From positions 186,001-250,000 of the IMG/VR virus record IMGVR_UViG_3300035665_000001: 64,000 nt of DNA; one strand, 5' to 3'. The position numbers were made by a program, and so were the translations under genes. Below are positions 44,334-64,000 of this stretch, one piece after another. Every line of letters begins with the position of its first letter. Position 1 is the first letter of the stretch. The notes below the pieces were generated by a model. The model had not been told where the DNA came from. It saw only the letters and a list, made by a program, of their open reading frames with translations, and searched no databases.

Positions 44334-44798
44334 TGTGATGAGATTGCGTTTATTCCCAACAGAATTCAGGAAGAATTTATGTCTGGCACAACACCGGCTC
44401 TTTCTGCTACAAAAGGAAAAATGTTAATTACCTCAACGCCCAATGGTTCGAGAGATTTATTTGCGAAACTTTGGTTTGGATCCGGTATGACATGGGATAA
44501 AAAACAATATACATACGTCAGAAAAAATGAACCAAAAAACCTTTTTAGTCCATTATTTGTACCTTTTTGGATTGACCCAGAAAAAAACACTGATGAATGG
44601 ATTCACAGAGAAAAGATGACTCTCGATAGCCCAATAGCATGGAAAATAGAGTTTGAATGTATGTATCCAGATACGTTGATTGATGTATATGATGAAAAAA
44701 CTAAAAATTATCAAACAATAACTATAGAAGATATGTATCGAATGATACTTCGAGATGAAATTGAGAATAAAGTTATTATTGATGAATCTGATAATTAG
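44010..44798 (+). CDS. terL: Large terminase middle fragment: IntC(108 aa) - ATPase Walker B/motif C region - IntN(46 aa)
   Basis: ILTPEGWRDFSGI..SETH..YDL..YTNGFVSKN|CDEIAFIP..LITSTPNG..IEFE|CMYPDTLIDV..ITIEDMY. Confidence 0.9.
   Translation: MKDINEWEILTPEGWRDFSGIIQLDKKVITIEFDNGKQLTGSETHRIFSKIGIQEFNTLMVGDEIKTNDGWTVVTKISDVKQTQKVYDLVEVKSANHQYYTNGFVSKNCDEIAFIPNRIQEEFMSGTTPALSATKGKMLITSTPNGSRDLFAKLWFGSGMTWDKKQYTYVRKNEPKNLFSPLFVPFWIDPEKNTDEWIHREKMTLDSPIAWKIEFECMYPDTLIDVYDEKTKNYQTITIEDMYRMILRDEIENKVIIDESDN
44658..44798 (+). other. Atypically split intein N-half (TerL intein 2), 46 aa
   Basis: CMYPDTLIDV block A plus ITIEDMY helix, then stop. Confidence 0.85.
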
Positions 44799-44806
44799 AG
44801 AAATAT

Positions 44807-45970
44807 ATGTTGTTGAAAGAAAAAATGATATTGATAGAATTCATAATATTCGCAAAAAACAATATTAATAATATCGCTGAAAATCCAACAGATACGTTCA
44901 TCGATAAAGTGGTTGAAATTTACCATCGCAAGAAAAATGTTGAATTTAAAAACCCACTAGCAAATGAATTTCCTAGAGCACCTAATACACTTGAATATTG
45001 GTTACACCGTGGATGGAATGAAAAAGAAGCAGAGAAAAAAAGGTGTGAAAAAATTCTCGCTAGTAGTTGCTCATTACAAGCTTTAATTGCTAAACATGGT
45101 GAAGAAAAAGGGTATCATTTGTTCACCGAAATCAATACTAAAAAATCAAATACTTTGGATGGTTTCATTAGAAGACACGGTGATGAAATAGGAAAAAAAT
45201 TGTACGCTGCATATACCCTAAAAATGTCCACACAAAATACTTTAGTTGGGATGATTGAAACTTATGGTGAAATTGAGGGTAATGAAAGATATAACACTAT
45301 GATTTCTGGTAAGATACATAACTTAGAAAGTGTTATTAAGCGATATGGGGAAGAAGAAGGTAAAAAACGATACACTGCTAGTAATTTAAAAAGAAGTAAA
45401 TCACACAGTTATGTGGGGTTCGTTGAAAGGTTTGGTTCTTACGCTGACCAAAAATGGGAGGAATTATCAAAAAATCGATCATATAGAACAACAGTAGATT
45501 ATTATATTGAAAAATATGGGGATGATTTAGGGAGAAAAAAACATACCGATTGGTTTAAATCATCGATTGGTGGTGATTTTAGTCAAAGTTTTTCAAAAAC
45601 ATCTAAAATGTTATTTGAAAGTTTAAAAAATAATGAATTTGCTCAATTTGGTTGTAATGAAGCTTTAATTGAATTAACTACAGATGAACAATCAGTTTTA
45701 AATAGGAAATTTATTCGCCCCGATTTTTTACTTGATAACAAAATAATTGAATTTTACGGAACCTATTGGCATTGTCATGAATCCATGTTTGCTGCAGATC
45801 AGATACATCCACAGTTTAATAAGACAGCAACAGATATACGAAACTACGATTGTAAGAAAAATGAGGTGTTGAAATTGAAAGGGTTTGATGTTTTGGTTAT
45901 TTGGGAACATAATTATTATGCTAACAAAGAAGGTATTATTGCACAGTGTAATGACTTCTTAAATCAATAA
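44807..45970 (+). CDS. Free-standing homing endonuclease with C-terminal Vsr-like PD-(D/E)xK domain
   Basis: Repeated K(H/Y)GxExGxxxY units; RPDF..IIEFYGTYWH..GFDVLVIWE; paralog of 62689-63924. Confidence 0.75.
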   Translation: MLLKEKMILIEFIIFAKNNINNIAENPTDTFIDKVVEIYHRKKNVEFKNPLANEFPRAPNTLEYWLHRGWNEKEAEKKRCEKILASSCSLQALIAKHGEEKGYHLFTEINTKKSNTLDGFIRRHGDEIGKKLYAAYTLKMSTQNTLVGMIETYGEIEGNERYNTMISGKIHNLESVIKRYGEEEGKKRYTASNLKRSKSHSYVGFVERFGSYADQKWEELSKNRSYRTTVDYYIEKYGDDLGRKKHTDWFKSSIGGDFSQSFSKTSKMLFESLKNNEFAQFGCNEALIELTTDEQSVLNRKFIRPDFLLDNKIIEFYGTYWHCHESMFAADQIHPQFNKTATDIRNYDCKKNEVLKLKGFDVLVIWEHNYYANKEGIIAQCNDFLNQ

Positions 45971-55470: not shown

Positions 55471-55533
55471 AATACTTGTTAAATTATTATAAAACTAACA
55501 ATCAAAAAATAAAAAACTTTATTGGAGAACAAA

Positions 55534-56856
55534 ATGATTGAAAACAATGTTAGAGAATTAACTGATAAAGAAAAATTACTGGAATTAAAAGAATGGTATT
55601 CCTCTGATGAATTATCAAAATCCCTTGATGTTACTGAAGAAATGCTTGGTAATTTTTTAAATGATAAAAGTTCTTTTACATTAACAAATTCTGAGAAATT
55701 GAACGATTTTTTTAATAACCATGTTCATGAAAATTCAAAATTTGAAATGATTAAAAATGTTTATGGTTTGTGGGAAACTGATGAAAAACAATTTATGGTT
55801 GATACTCCTGATGGGTTTCAATTTGTTAGTGAATTTATTCATAAAGATTCAAGAAGTTGCTTTGACTTAAGAACCGATAATTTTCATATTGAATGTTCGG
55901 GTGACCATTTGATTGAAACTGATAAAGGTTGGGTGAAAACTGAAGATATTGTAGTTGGTTCAAAAGTGTTAACCCGTGTTGGTTTTGAGGAAGTTAAATC
56001 AAATGCACAACTTAGTGATAGTGATGTTTACGATATGACTGTTGAACATGATAATCATCGATATTGGGGTGGTGCCGGTATTTCATCACATAATTCTGGT
56101 AAATCTTTTCTTATGGCTAAAGCGATTGTTGAGGCTCAAAAAGAAGGTTATATGGTGGCAGTATTAGATTCGGAACAAGCGGTTTCACAGGATTATTTGA
56201 AAAAAATTGGGGTTGATTTAGACCCATCAATGTTAATGACTGTGCAGGTACAAACAGTTGAACAAACTCAAGATATGCTTCTAGAAGTTTTGGAAGGTGT
56301 TAAGGAAGAACAAGAAGCTTTAGGAAATACCAAAGAACTAAAATTATTACTGATTGTTGATTCCATTGGTATGCTTTCATCTGGAAAAGCACTAGCAAAT
56401 GCTGAAGCTGGACATCACGCGGCTGATATGGGTACTAAAGCAAAAGCATTAACCAATATGTTCAACCAAATTGTACAAAAAGTTGGTATTACTGAAACTG
56501 TTTGTTTAGTAACTAATCATGGAGCATTAGAAGTTGGAGTTATGTTCCCACAACTCAAACCAAAAGGTGGACAATGTTTAGTAGCAGGTACAAAAGTACA
56601 AACTGATAAAGGTTATAAAAATATTGAAGAAATCCAAGTTGGTGATATGGTGAGAACACACTTGAACCAAATTAAACCTGTTGAAAAATTATTTAGTTTC
56701 GATAATCTTGATATTCTTAATTTTGAATTAGAAACAGGACAAAACATTAAAATGTCGAAGGATCATAAAATGTTAGTTTTGCGAAATGGTGAAAAATTGT
56801 GGTTGGAAGCTCAATTTATAACTACTTATGATTCATTGTTAGCACTTGATGTTTAA
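55534..56856 (+). CDS. recA: RecA/UvsX fragment 2: IntC(187 aa) - ATPase core - IntN(93 aa)
   Basis: GGAG RBS; ..CSGDHL..YDMTV..ISSHN|SGKS..LDSE..IVDSIG..VTNH..KGGQ|CLVAGTKV..SKDHK. Confidence 0.9.
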   Translation: MIENNVRELTDKEKLLELKEWYSSDELSKSLDVTEEMLGNFLNDKSSFTLTNSEKLNDFFNNHVHENSKFEMIKNVYGLWETDEKQFMVDTPDGFQFVSEFIHKDSRSCFDLRTDNFHIECSGDHLIETDKGWVKTEDIVVGSKVLTRVGFEEVKSNAQLSDSDVYDMTVEHDNHRYWGGAGISSHNSGKSFLMAKAIVEAQKEGYMVAVLDSEQAVSQDYLKKIGVDLDPSMLMTVQVQTVEQTQDMLLEVLEGVKEEQEALGNTKELKLLLIVDSIGMLSSGKALANAEAGHHAADMGTKAKALTNMFNQIVQKVGITETVCLVTNHGALEVGVMFPQLKPKGGQCLVAGTKVQTDKGYKNIEEIQVGDMVRTHLNQIKPVEKLFSFDNLDILNFELETGQNIKMSKDHKMLVLRNGEKLWLEAQFITTYDSLLALDV

Positions 56857-57945: not shown

Positions 57946-58614
57946 ATGAACTCAAATGAGTTTTTAGTCGATTCAAATTATAAACCAGTTAAGATTAAAT
58001 CTATTACCCCTGTGGCAATAGAAAAAACTTATGATTTTCAAGTTGCTGACGATCATAGTTTTTTATTAGAAAATAATATAATTTCAAGTAATTGTATGGA
58101 ATTTGTACCATCAATTTCTTTGCGTGTAACTAAAGGTAAGATTAAACCCACTGATTTGGCAGAATTAGAATATTTGTATGATGGTGGAATACCAAAACAT
58201 TTGGGTGCTTTAGGGATTGTATCGAGAATTGAATTGTATAAATCCCGATTTACCCGACCTTTTAGAAAGGTACAATTGATGATTCCATACGATTTTGGAT
58301 TACCTGAATATGCGGGATTATTTGATTATCTCAAAGATAATGGTATAATTATTGAAAATGGTAGAAAAGGTTATTATAATTGTACTGAGGTACAATTTGA
58401 AAAAGATTTTACTAGAAAAGATTTTATTAAAGGTGGTTGGGCTGATTTAATTATGGAACATTTATTAGCTGAGGAAACCAAAGGTAGAATTTATGATTTT
58501 ATTATGAAATCTAGTGATGATGATGCCCGAGAAAAAGAACAAGGATTAGATTCAATTGATGACTCTTACATTGAAGATGATGATATGGATGAATCGGAAT
58601 TTAATGTTGAATAA
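57946..58614 (+). CDS. recA: RecA/UvsX fragment 3: IntC(49 aa) plus C-terminal domain with acidic tail
   Basis: AAGGAG RBS; VKIKSI..TYDFQVADDHSFLLENNIISSN|CMEFVPSISL..KSRFTRPFR. Confidence 0.88.
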   Translation: MNSNEFLVDSNYKPVKIKSITPVAIEKTYDFQVADDHSFLLENNIISSNCMEFVPSISLRVTKGKIKPTDLAELEYLYDGGIPKHLGALGIVSRIELYKSRFTRPFRKVQLMIPYDFGLPEYAGLFDYLKDNGIIIENGRKGYYNCTEVQFEKDFTRKDFIKGGWADLIMEHLLAEETKGRIYDFIMKSSDDDAREKEQGLDSIDDSYIEDDDMDESEFNVE

Positions 58615-60358: not shown

Positions 60359-60796
60359 ATGTCAATTACAATTTACACTGATGGCAGTTGTCGTGGAAAC
60401 CCTGGACCAGGTGGTTGGGCTACATTGATAAAAAAAAGTAACGGTGGTGAAGAAAAAGTTTTACATGGTAGCAATGAAAAAACTACCAATAATGTGATGG
60501 AATTAACTGCCATCATTGAGGCTTTGCGAGAAATTCAATTATCTACCGATACAACTTTACCCATAAAAATATATTCTGATAGCACTTATTGTGTTAAAGG
60601 GATTTCTGAATGGCTTCCAGGTTGGATAAAAACCAATTTCAAAGGTAAAAAAAATGTGGATCTTTGGAAAGATTACATTTCCTGTTCAAAAGGCTTAAAC
60701 ATTACCGTTGAATGGGTTAAGGCACATAATGGTCATGAAGAAAATGAATTCGTTGATAGGTTAGCGTTTGAAGAAGCTAGTAGGTATTTTACATGA
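60359..60796 (+). CDS. rnhA: Ribonuclease HI
   Basis: YTDGSCRGNPGPGGW, TTNNVMEL, YSDSTY, WVKAHNG..NEFVDRLA. Confidence 0.95.
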   Translation: MSITIYTDGSCRGNPGPGGWATLIKKSNGGEEKVLHGSNEKTTNNVMELTAIIEALREIQLSTDTTLPIKIYSDSTYCVKGISEWLPGWIKTNFKGKKNVDLWKDYISCSKGLNITVEWVKAHNGHEENEFVDRLAFEEASRYFT

Positions 60797-60952: not shown

Positions 60953-62692
60953 ATGGCTAACTATATTGATTTTGCTTATTTAGGTAAAACCGCAGACCCA
61001 ACAGGCATTAGAGTGTGGGAACAAAATTATGAAACAGGTAAAATTGATGAGAAAGATTATGACATAAAAGATTATTTGTATTTTTACATTGATGCTACTG
61101 ACGAGAACAAAATTGAAAAAAATTTAATTTCTCAAAGGGGAACAAAAGTTAAAAAAGTGGTTGCAGATAACTTTAAAGTTCTTAGAAATGGTGAATCTGC
61201 GAAAATGTTTCATAGTTTAAATCTTAATACTTATGAGTCTGATATTGAACCCTTACATAAGGTAATGTTGGATAATTATGGAAAAGATCATCAAAAAGCC
61301 ACTAATTGGAATTTAGCTTTATATGATATTGAAACGGATGTTCGTATGGAGGATTCTTTTATGGGTATGCGAGCAAATGCAGATCGAGAGATAAACGCTA
61401 TTTCTGTGTGGTATTCGAAACCAAATAAATTTTATAATTTTACCGTTGTACCACCTATGCTGCGAGATGAATGGGATTTTGATACTATTGAAACTCGTGG
61501 TAATTTTGAGATTATCTATTTTGATAATGAAGAAGAAATGCTGGAAACATTTTTCACAGTTACAAAAAAACATGAAACTATGGCATTAGGTGCGTGGAAT
61601 GGGGATTTTTTCGATACCAAGTATATTTTTGATAGATGCAAAAATATTTGGAAAGAAAAAGGTGCTGCAGAACGAATGGGGCGGTTTACAAAAGTTAAAA
61701 AAACTAAAATCATGTTGGGTGAAAAAGAAGAAATTTTGGTTAGACCAATTGGTATGATTTGGTACGATTGTATGGAGGCTTATAAGAAAAATGGTCCAGA
61801 ATTAGAATCGTTTGCTCTAAATGCTGTAGTTGAACATGAAAATTTGGGAAGTAAGTTAGATTTTGAAGGGTCGTTTGAAACTTTATATCACGGAAGTAGA
61901 AAAGATAGAGATAGATTTTTAGAATTAACACCAAAGAAAAAAAGAAAAAATTTGATTAAAAAATCTAATGAGATTGGAAACTCGGTTATTTCTGATTTGG
62001 GGTTATATAGCGAATGTAAAGATATGTTGAAGATGGATACAAGCATCGAAGAATATGAATTGGAAACTCGAATTCAAATAAGTATTACTGATAGATTGGA
62101 AGAGCTTCTCAAAATGAATGAAACCAAAGAAGATTTAGGTGATATGTTTGAGGATTTTGAACGATTTGTAGTGTATAAAAAGTTAACAGATACTTATAGA
62201 CTTTTTGTTGATTATTCTAATCAGGATAGTCAACTTTTACATGATTTAGAAATGAAGTTGGAAAAATTTAAAACTCTTATGATGTTGGCACAGTATAATG
62301 TATCATCGTTTTATGATGTATTTTCTACACTCAAACAGGTTGAACAGGGTATTACTAATTTTGCTCATTTATATAATAATAAAGTTGTTATTGATCGAGA
62401 GTATGATAAGAAAAAACAGATTTATAATAAATTTGTTGATAAAGATTTGTTACAAATCAGAATCGACAATGATACTCGTATACAACCAAATGATAATCGG
62501 AAGATAAGAGAAATAAAAACTCTTTTGGAGCAAAAAAAAATACCTGGAGCCAACGTGCTTCAACCATACGTAGGATTGATTTCTTACAATGAGGCGGAAA
62601 CACCACAGTTAGCAAGAGAATTCAAATCATTAAAAAATGAATTGCGAGAAATAGATGAACAGTTAAAACAATTTGAAATGGATGAAAATTAG
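60953..62692 (+). CDS. polB: Family B DNA polymerase N-terminal (3'-5' exonuclease) subunit of a split gene
   Basis: ExoI YDIET, ExoII WNGDFFD, ExoIII YSNQD; ends PGANVLQPYVG plus a coiled coil, before polymerase motif A. Confidence 0.85.
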   Translation: MANYIDFAYLGKTADPTGIRVWEQNYETGKIDEKDYDIKDYLYFYIDATDENKIEKNLISQRGTKVKKVVADNFKVLRNGESAKMFHSLNLNTYESDIEPLHKVMLDNYGKDHQKATNWNLALYDIETDVRMEDSFMGMRANADREINAISVWYSKPNKFYNFTVVPPMLRDEWDFDTIETRGNFEIIYFDNEEEMLETFFTVTKKHETMALGAWNGDFFDTKYIFDRCKNIWKEKGAAERMGRFTKVKKTKIMLGEKEEILVRPIGMIWYDCMEAYKKNGPELESFALNAVVEHENLGSKLDFEGSFETLYHGSRKDRDRFLELTPKKKRKNLIKKSNEIGNSVISDLGLYSECKDMLKMDTSIEEYELETRIQISITDRLEELLKMNETKEDLGDMFEDFERFVVYKKLTDTYRLFVDYSNQDSQLLHDLEMKLEKFKTLMMLAQYNVSSFYDVFSTLKQVEQGITNFAHLYNNKVVIDREYDKKKQIYNKFVDKDLLQIRIDNDTRIQPNDNRKIREIKTLLEQKKIPGANVLQPYVGLISYNEAETPQLAREFKSLKNELREIDEQLKQFEMDEN

Positions 62693-63924
62693 ATTCTCTC
62701 TTTAATTAGATTCACACATTTTTCTACCATCTGTTCTATATTTTCTTTTGTTTCATAATCCCAAATTTCGATTACAGTGAACCCTTTTTTTTCAGCAGAT
62801 GCTAATTTTAATCTGTCCAATTCAAATTTTTCATCTGCTGATTTTCCTGTCCAAGGACATCTCCATCGTTCCCATTGCTCAGTTGTTAATTTTTCTTTTG
62901 ATGGGTGTACATGACTTCCATTATATTCAAAAATTAATTTTAGTGGTAAAATAGTATAATCGAATGAATGCAGTTTTGTACCTTCTTCAATTTTGTATTC
63001 ACAAGAGTTTTCAACGCCGTAAAAAATATCAGAAAAATCAATACCGTGTGCAAGTGAAAAATCAGTTAAATGTTTAAAAAATGCCAATGATTCTTTGGAA
63101 GCAATATAACCTGCATTGCTGTTTTTGTATTTTTTCCATCTGGTCAACCCTTCTTCATATCCATGAACTCTGATGAAATTCTCTTTAGTATTTGCAGATC
63201 GTTTACAAAATAGGTTGTATTTCTTTTCACCTAATTCTGTACCATACCGGGAAATGAAATTCTCCTTACTTAATTTAGATTTTTCTTTAAATTCTACCCA
63301 TTTTTGTTTTCCCAATTCTTCTCCATGCCGAAGTTTAAAATTTTCTTCGGATAGCATGCACTTTTTTTTCCATGATTTGTATTTCTTTTCACCCAATTCA
63401 ACACCATGACGTTTTTGCATTTTTTCTAAAGTTTGTCCACCTCTTGTAGAAATTGCCTTGGTAAACAATTTCAACCCTTCATCATTTCCATATTTCTTAG
63501 TGAATTTTTCTAAGGTAAGCACTTTTTTTGAATTCATTTCAGTGTATCTTCTAGATCCTTCTTCCAATCCATATTTTTCTACTTGTCCCTCTAACGTGTT
63601 ACCAATACCTTTTTTTCTGTTATTATCAAGATATTTTTTTAAACCTATCTCGTCACCATACTTTAACCTAAAATAATGTTCAGTGTTAGATTTAGTCTTT
63701 AGAAATTTTTTAAATCGGACTACTAAATTTTCTTCTAGGGTAGTGGTAGATATTAGCATACAATGAAACGAATATCTTTGTTCTTGTGTTAAATTTCCTC
63801 CCAATACTAAGTTGACGTCTTTTAATCTTTCAATCCCAATGTTTTCAAAAGTAATCCCATTCTCCTTAAAAAACTTATTGGTGAACGCTCTTTTCGTTTT
63901 TAAATTTAATTCTGAATATTTCAT
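62689..63924 (-). CDS. Free-standing homing endonuclease with Vsr-like C-terminal domain
   Basis: Many (K/R)YGxExGxxxY repeats; SFDY..IFEYNGSHVHP..GFTVIEIWD; paralog of 44807-45970. Confidence 0.75.
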   Translation of the reverse strand: MKYSELNLKTKRAFTNKFFKENGITFENIGIERLKDVNLVLGGNLTQEQRYSFHCMLISTTTLEENLVVRFKKFLKTKSNTEHYFRLKYGDEIGLKKYLDNNRKKGIGNTLEGQVEKYGLEEGSRRYTEMNSKKVLTLEKFTKKYGNDEGLKLFTKAISTRGGQTLEKMQKRHGVELGEKKYKSWKKKCMLSEENFKLRHGEELGKQKWVEFKEKSKLSKENFISRYGTELGEKKYNLFCKRSANTKENFIRVHGYEEGLTRWKKYKNSNAGYIASKESLAFFKHLTDFSLAHGIDFSDIFYGVENSCEYKIEEGTKLHSFDYTILPLKLIFEYNGSHVHPSKEKLTTEQWERWRCPWTGKSADEKFELDRLKLASAEKKGFTVIEIWDYETKENIEQMVEKCVNLIKERI

Positions 63925-64000
63925 GTTAACCGATTATTATTGTATAATTTAAATATATTATTATACAAATTTATGTATTTGAAGGTGTTTTCTTATGAAA

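What the first reader, a model, noticed from the sequence alone, without database searches (positions are those of the whole stretch)
60953..64000. DNA polymerase B split without an intein, ending in a coiled coil
Seen: the ORF holds ExoI-III and the GAxVxxPxxG segment, then stops with LAREFKSLKNELREIDEQLKQF and no Cys/Ser-initiated intein block. A convergent endonuclease follows, and a new + strand ATG with GAAGGTG RBS appears at 63995. It also has a roughly 90-aa insertion between ExoII and ExoIII. Known: two-subunit gp43A/B polymerases occur in some T4-like phages. Inference: the halves assemble non-covalently, perhaps through a newly acquired coiled coil, a second solution to gene fracture alongside the inteins.
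Basis: partly seen in the sequence, partly recalled or inferred. Interest (0 to 1): 0.6.

Follow-up and report, generated by a model that had tools for sequence, protein, structure and literature searches.

The report
Phage DNA polymerase in three genes
A lake-water jumbo phage and its many uncultured relatives encode their family B DNA polymerase as at least three separate, scattered genes without inteins or introns, and the first break is flanked by a matched pair of helices that probably zip the pieces together.

Summary
The sequence observations hold. Window 60953-62692 (+) is a 579-aa ORF with the PolB N-terminal and exonuclease domains. It runs to 13 residues past GAxVxxP, adds a 34-aa heptad tail and stops. 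No intein or intron is present.

The ATG at 63995 opens a very acidic 325-aa protein with no polymerase similarity. Motif A lies in a 235-aa gene (p2) 8.4 kb downstream of the p1 stop in the same 306-kb virus record. Motifs B and C lie in a 300-aa gene (p3) 21 kb further on. No thumb and no other replicative polymerase were found.

All three genes are conserved as stand-alone ORFs in dozens of metagenomic relatives. In some relatives they sit on opposite strands, so the fission is old and the pieces can only assemble as proteins.

The coiled-coil idea gains comparative support:
- The acidic p1 tail and the basic p2 head both show conserved heptads.
- A subclade splits p1 again, with a new tail/head pair at that break.
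- An unsplit relative carries a helix-loop-helix insertion at that same site.

Complex prediction gave only weak support. p2 and p3 overlap in the fingers region, so p3's role as third subunit is inferred. Verdict: a new variant of known split PolBs.

The parts
60953..62692 (+). p1: N-terminal subunit gene of the split family B DNA polymerase (579 aa). It holds the N-terminal domain, the 3'-5' exonuclease, the lead-in to the palm and an added tail helix.
   Evidence: There are 47 relatives of 47-75% identity, nearly all 570-585 aa and ending at the same place.
61319..61339 (+). ExoI motif LYDIETD (residues 123-129)
   Evidence: L123, D125, I126, E127 and D129 are invariant in alignment A1.
61595..61627 (+). 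ExoII motif WNGDFFDTKYI (residues 215-225)
   Evidence: W215, D218, F220, D221 and Y224 are invariant.
61871..62197 (+). Clade-specific insertion of about 100 aa between ExoII and ExoIII (residues about 307-415). Its start, residue 306/307, is where a subclade splits p1 a second time.
   Evidence: The T4-like HMM skips it. P0040 carries a 48-aa helix-loop-helix there. L100 is split there.
62213..62239 (+). ExoIII motif YSNQDSQLL (residues 421-429)
   Evidence: Y421, S422, Q424, D425 and L429 are invariant.
62546..62587 (+). Last ancestral PolB segment, GANVLQPYVGLISY (residues 532-545). It ends 5 residues before the place of the motif A aspartate.
   Evidence: In 21 contiguous T4-like PolBs, GAxVxxP to the motif A Asp is always 18 residues. 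p1 stops at about position 13 and p2 resumes at about 13/14.
62588..62689 (+). Added C-terminal tail (residues 546-579): an acidic amphipathic helix with a 4-3-4-3-4-3 heptad pattern (L553, F557, L560, L564, I567, L571, F574). It is the proposed zipper arm.
   Evidence: All seven positions are 100% large hydrophobic residues in 19 relatives. Mean net charge is -4.4.
62689..63924 (-). Convergent 411-aa ORF, a putative free-standing (homing-type) endonuclease sitting at the break point. It has five KYGxEEG-type repeats and a C-terminal FEYNG...H core.
   Evidence: phrog_22677 at E 6e-29. DUF559 at E 0.021, below the cut-off. Two paralogues in the genome. An N-terminal remnant lies next to p1 in L091.
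63981..64000 (+). GAAGGTG ribosome-binding site and the ATG (63995) of a 325-aa ORF that runs to genome 250972. It is conserved near p1 in relatives, very acidic, and not a polymerase piece.
   Evidence: Homologues in L008, L090 and L091. Net charge -24 to -33 and hhalign probability 0.06% against PolB. No lead from the Atlas.
60359..60796 (+). RNase H gene (145 aa) just upstream of p1; a replication-module neighbour.
   Evidence: Pfam RNase_H at E 6.8e-38.

Best explanation
The ORF is the N-terminal subunit (p1) of a replicative family B DNA polymerase that this clade of freshwater jumbo phages encodes in at least three independently translated genes.

- p1 carries the N-terminal domain, the proofreading exonuclease and the palm lead-in up to the turn before motif A.
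- p2 (235 aa, genome 257123-257830) carries the motif A strand and helix, and the first fingers helix.
- p3 (300 aa, genome 279267-280169) carries a complete fingers hairpin with motif B, motif C and the KK strand.

The pieces are joined neither as RNA nor by protein splicing. They assemble as proteins. At the p1/p2 break nothing of the ancestral enzyme is lost. Instead, 34 residues (acidic heptad helix) were added to p1 and 29 residues (basic heptad helix) to p2. I infer that these two helices pair as the arms of a hairpin-like, probably antiparallel, coiled coil, and that this brings the motif A strand back to its place.

Selfish endonuclease genes sit at or beside several of the break points. 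They probably caused the fissions or later colonised them.

Shown: the gene structure, its conservation, the motifs, the heptads, the charge pattern, and the absence of intein or intron signals. Inferred: helix pairing, the p2-p3 contact, and catalytic activity.
For: Pieces. PF00136 and phrog_262 scans of the whole 306-kb record find only p1, p2 and p3. A T4-like HMM over all six-frame ORFs finds only p1 and p2.

p2. It carries DFASMYPS. hhalign places p2 29-220 on PolB 382-539 at 98.7% probability.

p3. Its AlphaFold model has pLDDT 92. The model matches PolB palm plus fingers: Foldseek probability 1.0, and VIA Z 15.2, rmsd 3.6 A, 236 residues aligned to Tgo PolB 323-637. hhalign gives E 4.5e-7. 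R111, K138, N142, Y145, G146 and D194 are kept in 18-21 of 22 sequences.

Conservation. p1 has 47 relatives, p2 has 64 and p3 has 27 cluster representatives. All are stand-alone ORFs of constant length. By matching contig lengths, p1, p2 and p3 relatives appear to share one 73.5-kb contig, and p2 and p3 relatives a 26-kb contig. The p2/p3 pair on a 13-kb contig was read directly.

No splicing in cis. p1 and p2 lie on opposite strands in L091, and p2 and p3 in L097. The DNA between them differs between relatives. Each gene has its own ribosome-binding site. Rfam finds no intron. No Hint domain is present in the pieces, although the genome has at least 6 intein loci elsewhere.

Zipper.
- The heptads are perfectly conserved.
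- Tail charge averages -4.4 and head charge +2.1.
- The p2 head is modelled as a 29-residue helix.
- The break is clean.
- The most divergent pair, L089, has both a longer tail and a longer head.
- A second split of p1 in L100, P0043, P0045 and P0046 carries a new tail/head helix pair. The unsplit P0040 has a helix-loop-helix insertion at exactly that site.

Complex prediction, p1 with p2: score 0.36, best control 0.00. This mark was reached by 58 of 80 solved complexes and 2 of 110 mismatched pairs. At 0.60 or under it was reached by only 7 of the 80 solved complexes and by both mismatches that passed. The runs agree in at least 61% of contacts, and the partner's pLDDT is at least 64. The tool's verdict is weak support.

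No PolA is present, and the only Pol III alpha signal is a 170-aa fragment.
Against: - Binding was not shown. The complex score counts only as weak support, and no interface was returned.
- p2 and p3 are not a clean partition. p2 runs into the start of the second fingers helix: it keeps the motif B lysine (K219) but has lost NSxYG. p3 has its own first fingers helix (R111, K112, K115). The two therefore overlap by about 50 ancestral positions. The p3 model alone looks like a closed palm-fingers module, and its N-terminal 100 residues are of unclear homology.
- p3 evolves faster than its neighbours (about 40% against 55-73% identity). It always sits between a P-loop kinase gene and a nucleotidyltransferase gene, which could point to another role.
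- No thumb domain was found.
- The record is only 85% complete, so another polymerase gene could lie in the missing part.
- No RNA or protein data exist.
Confidence: 0.62

Rival explanations
1. Only p1 and p2 belong together. p3 is a separate PolB-derived paralogue with a job of its own, for instance working with the flanking kinase and nucleotidyltransferase. The true motif B/C/thumb partner of p1 and p2 is then too divergent to detect, or lies in the missing 15% of the genome.
For: p2 and p3 overlap in the fingers. The p3 model is a self-contained palm-fingers fold. p3 has a conserved gene neighbourhood of its own and evolves faster than that neighbourhood. Profile comparison finds no p2-p3 or p1-p3 similarity. 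The record is 85% complete.
Against: p3 keeps exactly the catalytic residues that p2 lacks (motif B K/N/Y/G and the motif C Asp), and lacks the motif A Asp that p2 keeps invariant. No other PolB signal exists in 306 kb. p2 and p3 co-occur wherever contigs are long enough. p3 relatives are never fused to a thumb or to anything else.
Confidence: 0.22
2. The pieces are decaying remnants, or p1 survives only as a stand-alone exonuclease. The phage would then be replicated by a host polymerase or by another phage polymerase.
For: No thumb was found. p3 is divergent. A 170-aa DnaE-like fragment exists. This type of fragment was described as a split minimal Pol III alpha in group 2.2 jumbo phages (PMC7824862).
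Against: All exonuclease and polymerase catalytic residues are invariant or nearly so across dozens of relatives down to 47% identity, with constant ORF lengths. Pseudogenes would not hold frame and motifs over that divergence. No PolA is present and no full Pol III alpha.
Confidence: 0.08
3. The halves are joined after transcription or translation, by a group I/II intron, by trans-splicing or by a split intein.
For: The genome is rich in inteins and homing-type endonuclease genes. Related huge phages have polymerase and terL genes interrupted by group I introns and endonucleases (PMC12880540).
Against: Pfam finds no Hint or intein match in p1 or p2, and there is no Cys/Ser...HN-Cys/Ser/Thr junction. 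Rfam finds no intron family at E <= 1 in the 21 kb that hold the pieces. Between p1 and p2 lie 8.4 kb with at least ten ORFs of 60 aa or more on the same strand. The pieces lie on opposite strands in L091 and L097. Each piece has its own start codon and ribosome-binding site.
Confidence: 0.03
4. The stop codon is a sequencing or assembly artefact in an otherwise intact gene.
For: The source is a single metagenome-assembled record.
Against: The stop and its junction are identical in contigs from other lake metagenomes. The same ORF end is found in 47 relatives.
Confidence: 0.01

Closest known systems
Split gene 43 (43A/43B) of Aeromonas T4-like phages 25 and 44RR
   Same: A family B polymerase of a myovirus is encoded in separate cistrons without an intein. 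A homing-type endonuclease gene (seg) is associated with the break in phage 25. The two products co-purify and are active (PMC2988022).
   Different: That case has two adjacent cistrons. Here at least three genes are spread over 33 kb, and in relatives they lie on opposite strands. The paper I read does not mention helical extensions at the break. I could not check the break position there.
PhiKZ (chimallivirus) DNAP-N/DNAP-C split PolB
   Same: A jumbo-phage PolB is made of separately encoded subunits from distant genes that form a stable complex. An RNase H protein is associated with it (PMC13648687). Here an RNase H gene lies just upstream of p1.
   Different: PhiKZ splits after motif A, inside a large palm-insertion domain built from both subunits. 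It keeps a thumb and has two subunits. Here the first break is before motif A, each side carries one simple helix, there is a further break or overlap in the fingers, and no thumb was found. p1 groups with T4-like, group 2 PolBs rather than the chimallivirus clade.
Split-intein PolB and DnaE (Nanoarchaeum PolB, cyanobacterial DnaE)
   Same: The polymerase is encoded in distant gene pieces. This comparison rests on my own knowledge.
   Different: Those pieces are ligated by protein trans-splicing. Here no Hint fragments are present.
Engineered Pfu polymerase split at the finger tip
   Same: It shows that a PolB tolerates a break in the fingers domain (PMC3061061, abstract). The p2/p3 boundary lies in the fingers.
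   Different: It is an artificial termination-reinitiation within one gene, with no overlap between the parts.
Genes in pieces caused by free-standing homing endonucleases (Aeh1 nrdA/mobE, T4 gene 60/mobA); fragmented genes of gut 'Jug' phages
   Same: An endonuclease-type gene sits at the break point and the enzyme is reassembled from separate polypeptides (PMC2988022, PMC12880540).
   Different: Here the breaks are old and fixed in a whole clade. The pieces have since drifted apart in the genome, and dedicated helical extensions have evolved at two independent breaks.

Membership tests
Family B DNA polymerase (the enzyme as a whole) | 3'-5' exonuclease motifs ExoI, ExoII and ExoIII | tested here: met
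   p1: D125/E127, D221 and Y421/D425 are invariant in 19 sequences. PF03104 at E 1.3e-15.
Family B DNA polymerase (the enzyme as a whole) | Motif A, DxxSLYPS, with the catalytic Asp | tested here: met
   p2 has DFASMYPS. D35, F36, S38 and Y40 are invariant in 21 sequences. hhalign against PolB gives 98.7% probability.
Family B DNA polymerase (the enzyme as a whole) | Motif B, KxxxNSxYG | tested here: met
   p3 has KLYLNLVYG. K138 is kept in 21/22, N142 in 21/22, Y145 in 19/22 and G146 in 18/22; the Ser position varies. p2 keeps only the Lys.
Family B DNA polymerase (the enzyme as a whole) | Motif C, YxDTD, with the catalytic second Asp, and the KKxY strand | tested here: met
   p3 has YYIDTDV, with D194 kept in 21/22. 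K244 is kept in 18/22 and K245 in 19/22. The p3 model matches PolB palm and fingers at Z 15.2. The Pfam PF00136 score is below the cut-off (19 against 23 bits).
Family B DNA polymerase (the enzyme as a whole) | Thumb domain | tested here: not met
   p3 ends about 105 residues after motif C, and only two short helices reach into the thumb region. HMM and profile scans of all ORFs find no thumb. A very divergent thumb gene, or one in the missing 15%, is not excluded.
Family B DNA polymerase (the enzyme as a whole) | Polymerase activity of the assembled pieces | not testable with these tools
   This needs expression and a primer-extension assay.
T4-like two-cistron gp43A/gp43B | Two adjacent cistrons that together give the whole enzyme | tested here: not met
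   There are three genes, with gaps of 8.4 and 21.4 kb. In relatives the pieces lie on opposite strands.
PhiKZ-type DNAP-N/DNAP-C | Split after motif A within a shared palm-insertion domain | tested here: not met
   The break is 5 residues before the motif A Asp. Only single helices were added at the break.
Split intein (protein trans-splicing) | Hint N- and C-fragments at the break, with a Cys/Ser start and an HN + Cys/Ser/Thr end | tested here: not met
   No Hint or intein Pfam hit in p1 or p2. The p2 head is all heptad helix and ends ...LKNKS-LVSVVDF.
Intron-interrupted gene | A group I/II intron RNA between exons on one strand | tested here: not met
   No Rfam hit at E <= 1. At least ten ORFs lie between the pieces. 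The pieces lie on opposite strands in relatives.
Heterodimeric coiled coil (zipper) at the break | Heptad a/d hydrophobic pattern in both partners | tested here: met
   p1: positions 553, 557, 560, 564, 567, 571 and 574 are all 100% large hydrophobic residues. p2: positions 7, 14, 18, 21 and 25 are 95-100%.
Heterodimeric coiled coil (zipper) at the break | Complementary charge between the partners | tested here: met
   Mean tail charge is -4.4 (negative in 18 of 19). Mean head charge is +2.1 (positive in 17 of 21).
Heterodimeric coiled coil (zipper) at the break | The two helices actually bind each other | tested here: inconclusive
   Complex score 0.36 against a best control of 0.00, which the tool rates as weak support, and no interface was given. 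Indirect support: at the second break site of the clade, a helix-loop-helix insertion is found in the unsplit P0040.

The most novel reading that the evidence does not exclude
In this phage clade, gene fission of an essential enzyme follows a repeatable route. A surface loop first gains, or is left with, a two-helix hairpin. The gene is then cut in the hairpin loop, probably by a selfish endonuclease gene. The two arms survive as a natural heterospecific zipper that holds the fragments together. This happened at least twice in the same polymerase: at p1|p2, and at p1a|p1b in a subclade. The result is a three- to four-subunit PolB that lacks a thumb, has overlapping (duplicated) fingers, and may bind its processivity factor through a short C-terminal FPEYxI peptide shared with other small phage proteins.
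Probability: 0.35. Interest if true: 0.75.

Novelty: new variant of a known kind. Interest (0 to 1): 0.62.

Why it matters
Two-piece family B polymerases are known from Aeromonas T4-like phages and from PhiKZ. How the fragments find each other has been an open structural question for the T4-like cases (PMC2988022). In PhiKZ the answer was an interdigitated insertion domain (PMC13648687).

This clade offers a simpler and testable answer: one helix added to each side of a clean break. The same device recurs at a second break, and an unsplit intermediate carries the fused helix-loop-helix.

If confirmed, it would give three things:
- a natural example of zipper-assisted reassembly of a split enzyme;
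- a model for how essential genes survive invasion by selfish endonuclease genes;
- a naturally evolved set of split sites and tags for engineering split polymerases.

It also warns annotators that PolB-based phage taxonomy, and completeness checks on metagenomes, can miss or miscount such polymerases.

Tried and rejected
- The ORF at window 63995 as the second half. Rejected: no family hits, hhalign probability 0.06% against PolB, net charge -24 to -33, and no lead from the Atlas.
- Close relatives in IMG/VR: none, either with the single protein or with the alignment. Only contiguous T4-like PolBs of at most 32% identity turned up.
- The word search with p3 found nothing. The exhaustive HMMER search was needed.
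- Search for a thumb. The T4-like HMM over all six-frame ORFs gave only chance hits: ORF 206696-207208 at 3.6 bits, and the UvsX ORF. The ORF after p3 is a phage nucleotidyltransferase, not a thumb. The small ORFs after p2 are not PolB.
- My first reading of p3 residues 71-88 as a degenerate motif A. It is not supported by sequence: hhalign starts p3 after motif A, and profiles show no p2-p3 or p1-p3 similarity. Structure alignment does span that region, so this stays open.
- The p2 model on its own (pLDDT 77) gives no PolB match (best Z 4.7). This is uninformative, as expected for a fragment.
- Polymorphism of the endonuclease ORF. No contig in four other lake metagenomes lacks it. The single joint reported had only a 21-letter side and I ignored it.
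- RNA evidence: no RNA run holds the stretch.
- Complex prediction on p1 with p2 gave weak support only.
Full report
**Where the window lies.** The window is bases 186001-250000 of a 306,333-bp IMG/VR virus record. The record is linear, estimated 85% complete and about 29% G+C. Near-identical DNA occurs in lake and freshwater metagenomes from at least six studies. No run on record as RNA holds the stretch. By its polymerase, RNase H, UvsX-type recombinase and a mini Pol III alpha fragment, this is a T4-like 'group 2' jumbo phage in the sense of PMC7824862.

**The observation.** ORF 60953-62692 (+) encodes 579 aa.
- It matches Pfam DNA_pol_B_exo1 (E 1.3e-15), phrog_262 'DNA polymerase' positions 37-377 of 856 (E 2.3e-37), and positions 2-365 of a T4-like PolB HMM that I built from 21 contiguous phage PolBs (E 3.9e-42).
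- ExoI, ExoII and ExoIII are present and invariant in relatives.
- ExoII and ExoIII are 204 residues apart, so the clade carries an insertion of about 100 aa there.
- After GANVLQPYVGLISY the protein continues with 34 residues and stops.
- In all 21 contiguous PolBs, GAxVxxP lies exactly 18 residues before the motif A aspartate. p1 ends its ancestral part at about position 13 of that stretch.
- A 411-aa ORF on the other strand (62689-63924) overlaps the stop. GAAGGTG and an ATG follow at 63981-63997.
- Contigs of four other lake metagenomes cover the region without a single difference. One 940-base contig bridges the p1 stop into the reverse ORF.

**What follows the ORF.** The ATG at 63995 opens a 325-aa ORF with no polymerase motif and no family hit. 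Its net charge is -33, and it shows no profile similarity to PolB. It is conserved near p1 in three relatives, but it is not the missing half.

Scans of the whole record with PF00136 and phrog_262 found two further pieces on the same strand.
- p2 lies at genome 257123-257830 (235 aa), 8.4 kb downstream of the p1 stop. It has a helical head followed at once by VDFASMYPS, which is motif A.
- p3 lies at genome 279267-280169 (300 aa), 21.4 kb further on. It has KLYLNLVYG (motif B), YYIDTDV (motif C) and a KK strand.
- Between p1 and p2 lie at least ten ORFs of 60 aa or more on the same strand, among them an NAD synthase and a cytidylyltransferase-like gene.
- No PolA is present. The only Pol III alpha signal is a 170-aa fragment.

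**Are the pieces real genes?** Yes.
- p1 has 47 relatives (clusters at 90% identity) of 47-75% identity. Nearly all are 570-585 aa, and all end with the same tail.
- p2 has 64 relatives of 46-68% identity. Full-length ones are 227-248 aa; shorter hits are partial. All those aligned start with the same kind of head and end at the same place.
- p3 was missed by the word search. The exhaustive search found 27 cluster representatives of 19-47% identity. Most are about 260-300 aa, and none is fused to anything.
- The catalytic residues are the most conserved positions in each piece.
- The p3 AlphaFold model is confident (pLDDT 92, pTM 0.88). It matches family B polymerases over palm and fingers: Foldseek probability 1.0, and VIA Z 15.2, rmsd 3.6 A, 236 residues aligned to Tgo PolB 323-637.

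**The arrangement varies between relatives.**
- L089: p1 and p2 are 565 nt apart.
- L090: they are 8 kb apart, with different genes between them.
- L091: they lie on opposite strands.
- L097: p2 and p3 lie on opposite strands.
- By matching contig lengths, relatives of p1, p2 and p3 appear to share one 73.5-kb contig.
- Each piece has its own ribosome-binding site.
- Rfam finds no intron in the 21 kb examined.
- Pfam finds no Hint domain in the pieces, although the genome has at least six intein loci elsewhere.

Cis-splicing, trans-splicing by inteins and assembly error are thus excluded or very unlikely. The fission is old and fixed in the clade.

**The coiled-coil idea.**
- In the p1 tail, positions 553, 557, 560, 564, 567, 571 and 574 are large hydrophobic residues in all 19 aligned sequences. 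This is a perfect 4-3 heptad spacing over three heptads.
- In the p2 head, positions 7, 14, 18, 21 and 25 behave likewise.
- Tails are acidic (mean -4.4) and heads are basic (mean +2.1).
- AlphaFold models the p2 head as one 29-residue helix. The following motif A strand has low confidence, as expected for a strand that needs a partner sheet.
- In the most divergent pair, found on one contig (L089), both tail and head are longer.

The strongest support is comparative. In a subclade (L100; P0043, P0045, P0046), p1 is split a second time at residue 306/307. The N-terminal fragment (335 aa) ends in a new helical tail, and in L100 the C-terminal fragment (307 aa) begins with a new helical head. 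The unsplit relative P0040 carries a 48-aa helix-loop-helix insertion at exactly that site. Its first helix is visibly related to the tails of P0043 and P0045. If that insertion folds as the hairpin its sequence suggests (a 4-residue loop between two heptad stretches), its arms pack against each other. So at that break the tail and head helices are most simply read as partners. By analogy the same holds at the p1|p2 break.

The direct test was weaker. The complex predictor scored p2 against p1 at 0.36, with a best control of 0.00. That mark was reached by 58 of 80 solved complexes and 2 of 110 mismatched pairs. At 0.60 or under it was reached by only 7 of the 80 solved complexes and by both mismatches that passed. 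The runs agree in at least 61% of contacts, and the partner's pLDDT is at least 64. The tool rates this as weak support and gives no interface.

**The unresolved part: p2, p3 and the thumb.** By profile alignment, p2 covers PolB positions 382-539 of my reference. It includes the first fingers helix (R200, K201 and K204 invariant) and the first turn of the second helix. There it keeps the motif B lysine (K219) but has lost NSxYG. p3 aligns from just after motif A to beyond motif C. It has its own first fingers helix (R111, K112, K115) and an intact motif B.

The two genes therefore overlap by roughly 50 ancestral positions. This is what fission by duplication and complementary loss would leave. 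It also means that I cannot say which helix serves in the active enzyme. The N-terminal 100 residues of p3 are conserved but of unclear origin. p3 lacks a motif A aspartate (position 79 is Y/T/S), so it cannot be a complete polymerase by itself. p2 has the aspartate but no motif C. This complementarity, the co-occurrence of the two genes and the absence of any other PolB signal are my reasons for calling p3 the third subunit. It remains an inference.

p3 ends where the thumb should begin. No thumb was found by HMM or profile searches, and the genes next to p1, p2 and p3 are not thumbs.

**Endonuclease genes at the breaks.** The 411-aa reverse ORF has five KYGxEEG-type repeats and a C-terminal FEYNG...H core. 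It matches DUF559 (Vsr-like nucleases) only weakly (E 0.021), and it has two paralogues in the genome. A 132-aa N-terminal remnant lies beside p1 in L091. In L100 a 592-aa gene of a related design (KYGV repeats plus an IEFNG..WH core) follows p1b. That family has at least eight paralogues in this genome. In the P0043 contig a 349-aa reverse gene lies between p1a and p1b, but I could not read its DNA. Selfish endonuclease genes are thus regular tenants of the break points, as in the known 'genes in pieces' of T4-like phages (PMC2988022) and gut Jug phages (PMC12880540). Whether they made the breaks is inferred.

**Comparison with what is known.** Split PolBs without inteins are known.
- Aeromonas phages 25 and 44RR have gp43A/B: adjacent cistrons whose products co-purify and are active (PMC2988022).
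- PhiKZ has DNAP-N/DNAP-C. Its break lies after motif A, inside a large shared insertion domain, and a thumb is present (PMC13648687).
- An engineered Pfu enzyme tolerates a break at the finger tip (PMC3061061).

The present clade differs in five ways:
1. the number of pieces (three, or four in a subclade);
2. their scattering across the genome and across strands;
3. the position of the first break, before motif A;
4. the simple paired helices at two independent breaks;
5. the overlap in the fingers, and the missing thumb.

My five paper searches found no description of this arrangement. That is not proof that none exists.

**Verdict.** It is wrong about the partner gene and about the number of pieces. 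I rate this a new variant of a known kind, of moderate to high interest. Its chief open points are physical proof of the zipper, the role of p3 and the whereabouts of a thumb.

Noticed in passing
window 55513-56853 (+) and 57946-58614 (+): The UvsX/RecA-type recombinase gene is in pieces and carries inteins. The first ORF holds an intein C-end (residues 130-187), the RecA core, and then an intein N-part at which the ORF stops. The second ORF begins with an intein C-end (...LLENNIISSN|C) followed by the UvsX C-terminus. The 1.1-kb gap holds reverse-strand ORFs, one of which is related to the KYGV-repeat endonuclease family. This may be a naturally split intein.
   Followed up: partly
L092 1495-2007 (-), that is genome 23731-24243, outside the window: A 170-aa ORF with a DnaE-type motif (GSGVASYIFYVIGLNKVNPYKFGL). 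It scores 22.6 bits against PF07733, just under the cut-off. It fits the 'minimal, split Pol III alpha' that Iyer et al. described for group 2.2 jumbo phages (PMC7824862). I did not look for its second half.
   Followed up: partly
L100 6034-7041 and 7338-8261; proteins P0043, P0045, P0046; P0040 (alignment A1, columns about 312-362): In a subclade, p1 is split again at residue 306/307 with a new helical tail/head pair. The unsplit relative P0040 has a 48-aa helix-loop-helix insertion at the same site.
   Followed up: yes
p3 family C-ends (A3); L090 10871-11209; L091 10239-10592; L097 2180-2497, 1920-2183 and 1599-1850 (-); own genome 55216-55695 (+): A short C-terminal motif, [FY]PE[YHL]x[IL]-COOH, is shared by p3 relatives and by several small ORFs next to p2 in relatives; three of the five are homologous to one another. 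Its background rate is 1 in 7,475 windows of 16 aa. It may be a peptide that binds a hub such as the sliding clamp, like the C-terminal tail of T4/RB69 gp43.
   Followed up: partly
window 63995-64000, continuing to genome 250972 (L003 3995-4972): A 325-aa, extremely acidic protein (net charge -33). It is conserved close to p1 in three relatives at 35-50% identity. It has no family, no fold lead and no similarity to PolB.
   Followed up: partly
window 44795-45967 (+); genome 50770-51843 (+); genome 73030-74853, 118693-120498, 298277-299731 (+); 262767-263831, 265452-266558, 272076-273151 (-): There are two related families of putative free-standing endonuclease genes, each with KYG-type repeats and a Vsr/DUF559-like core. 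Together they have at least ten copies in this genome.
   Followed up: partly
L003 6425-9490 (genome 252425-255490), between p1 and p2: A cluster of genes for NAD metabolism: NAD synthase (PF02540, E 3.5e-28), a 2OG-Fe(II) oxygenase-like ORF, and a 467-aa ORF with a cytidylyltransferase-like domain. Compare the reports of NAD+ synthesis genes in jumbo phages (PMC11662467).
   Followed up: no
L099 138-788 and 1839-3203 (genome 278537-279187 and 280238-281602): In five genomes p3 is always flanked by a Zeta-toxin/AAA_33-type P-loop kinase gene and a phage nucleotidyltransferase gene (phrog_19290). The flanking genes are 55-73% identical between genomes, but p3 only about 40%.
   Followed up: partly
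genome 64456-65277, 108484-110084, 117459-117611, 159481-159843, 169724-170005, 242575-242832: There are at least six loci with intein-splicing domains in the record. Several of them have stop codons inside the match.
   Followed up: no
L004 1120-1160 (genome about 279192-279232), just upstream of p3: An inverted repeat (ATATGGATTTT ... AAAATCCATAT) lies between the kinase gene and p3. It may be a terminator or a regulatory hairpin.
   Followed up: no
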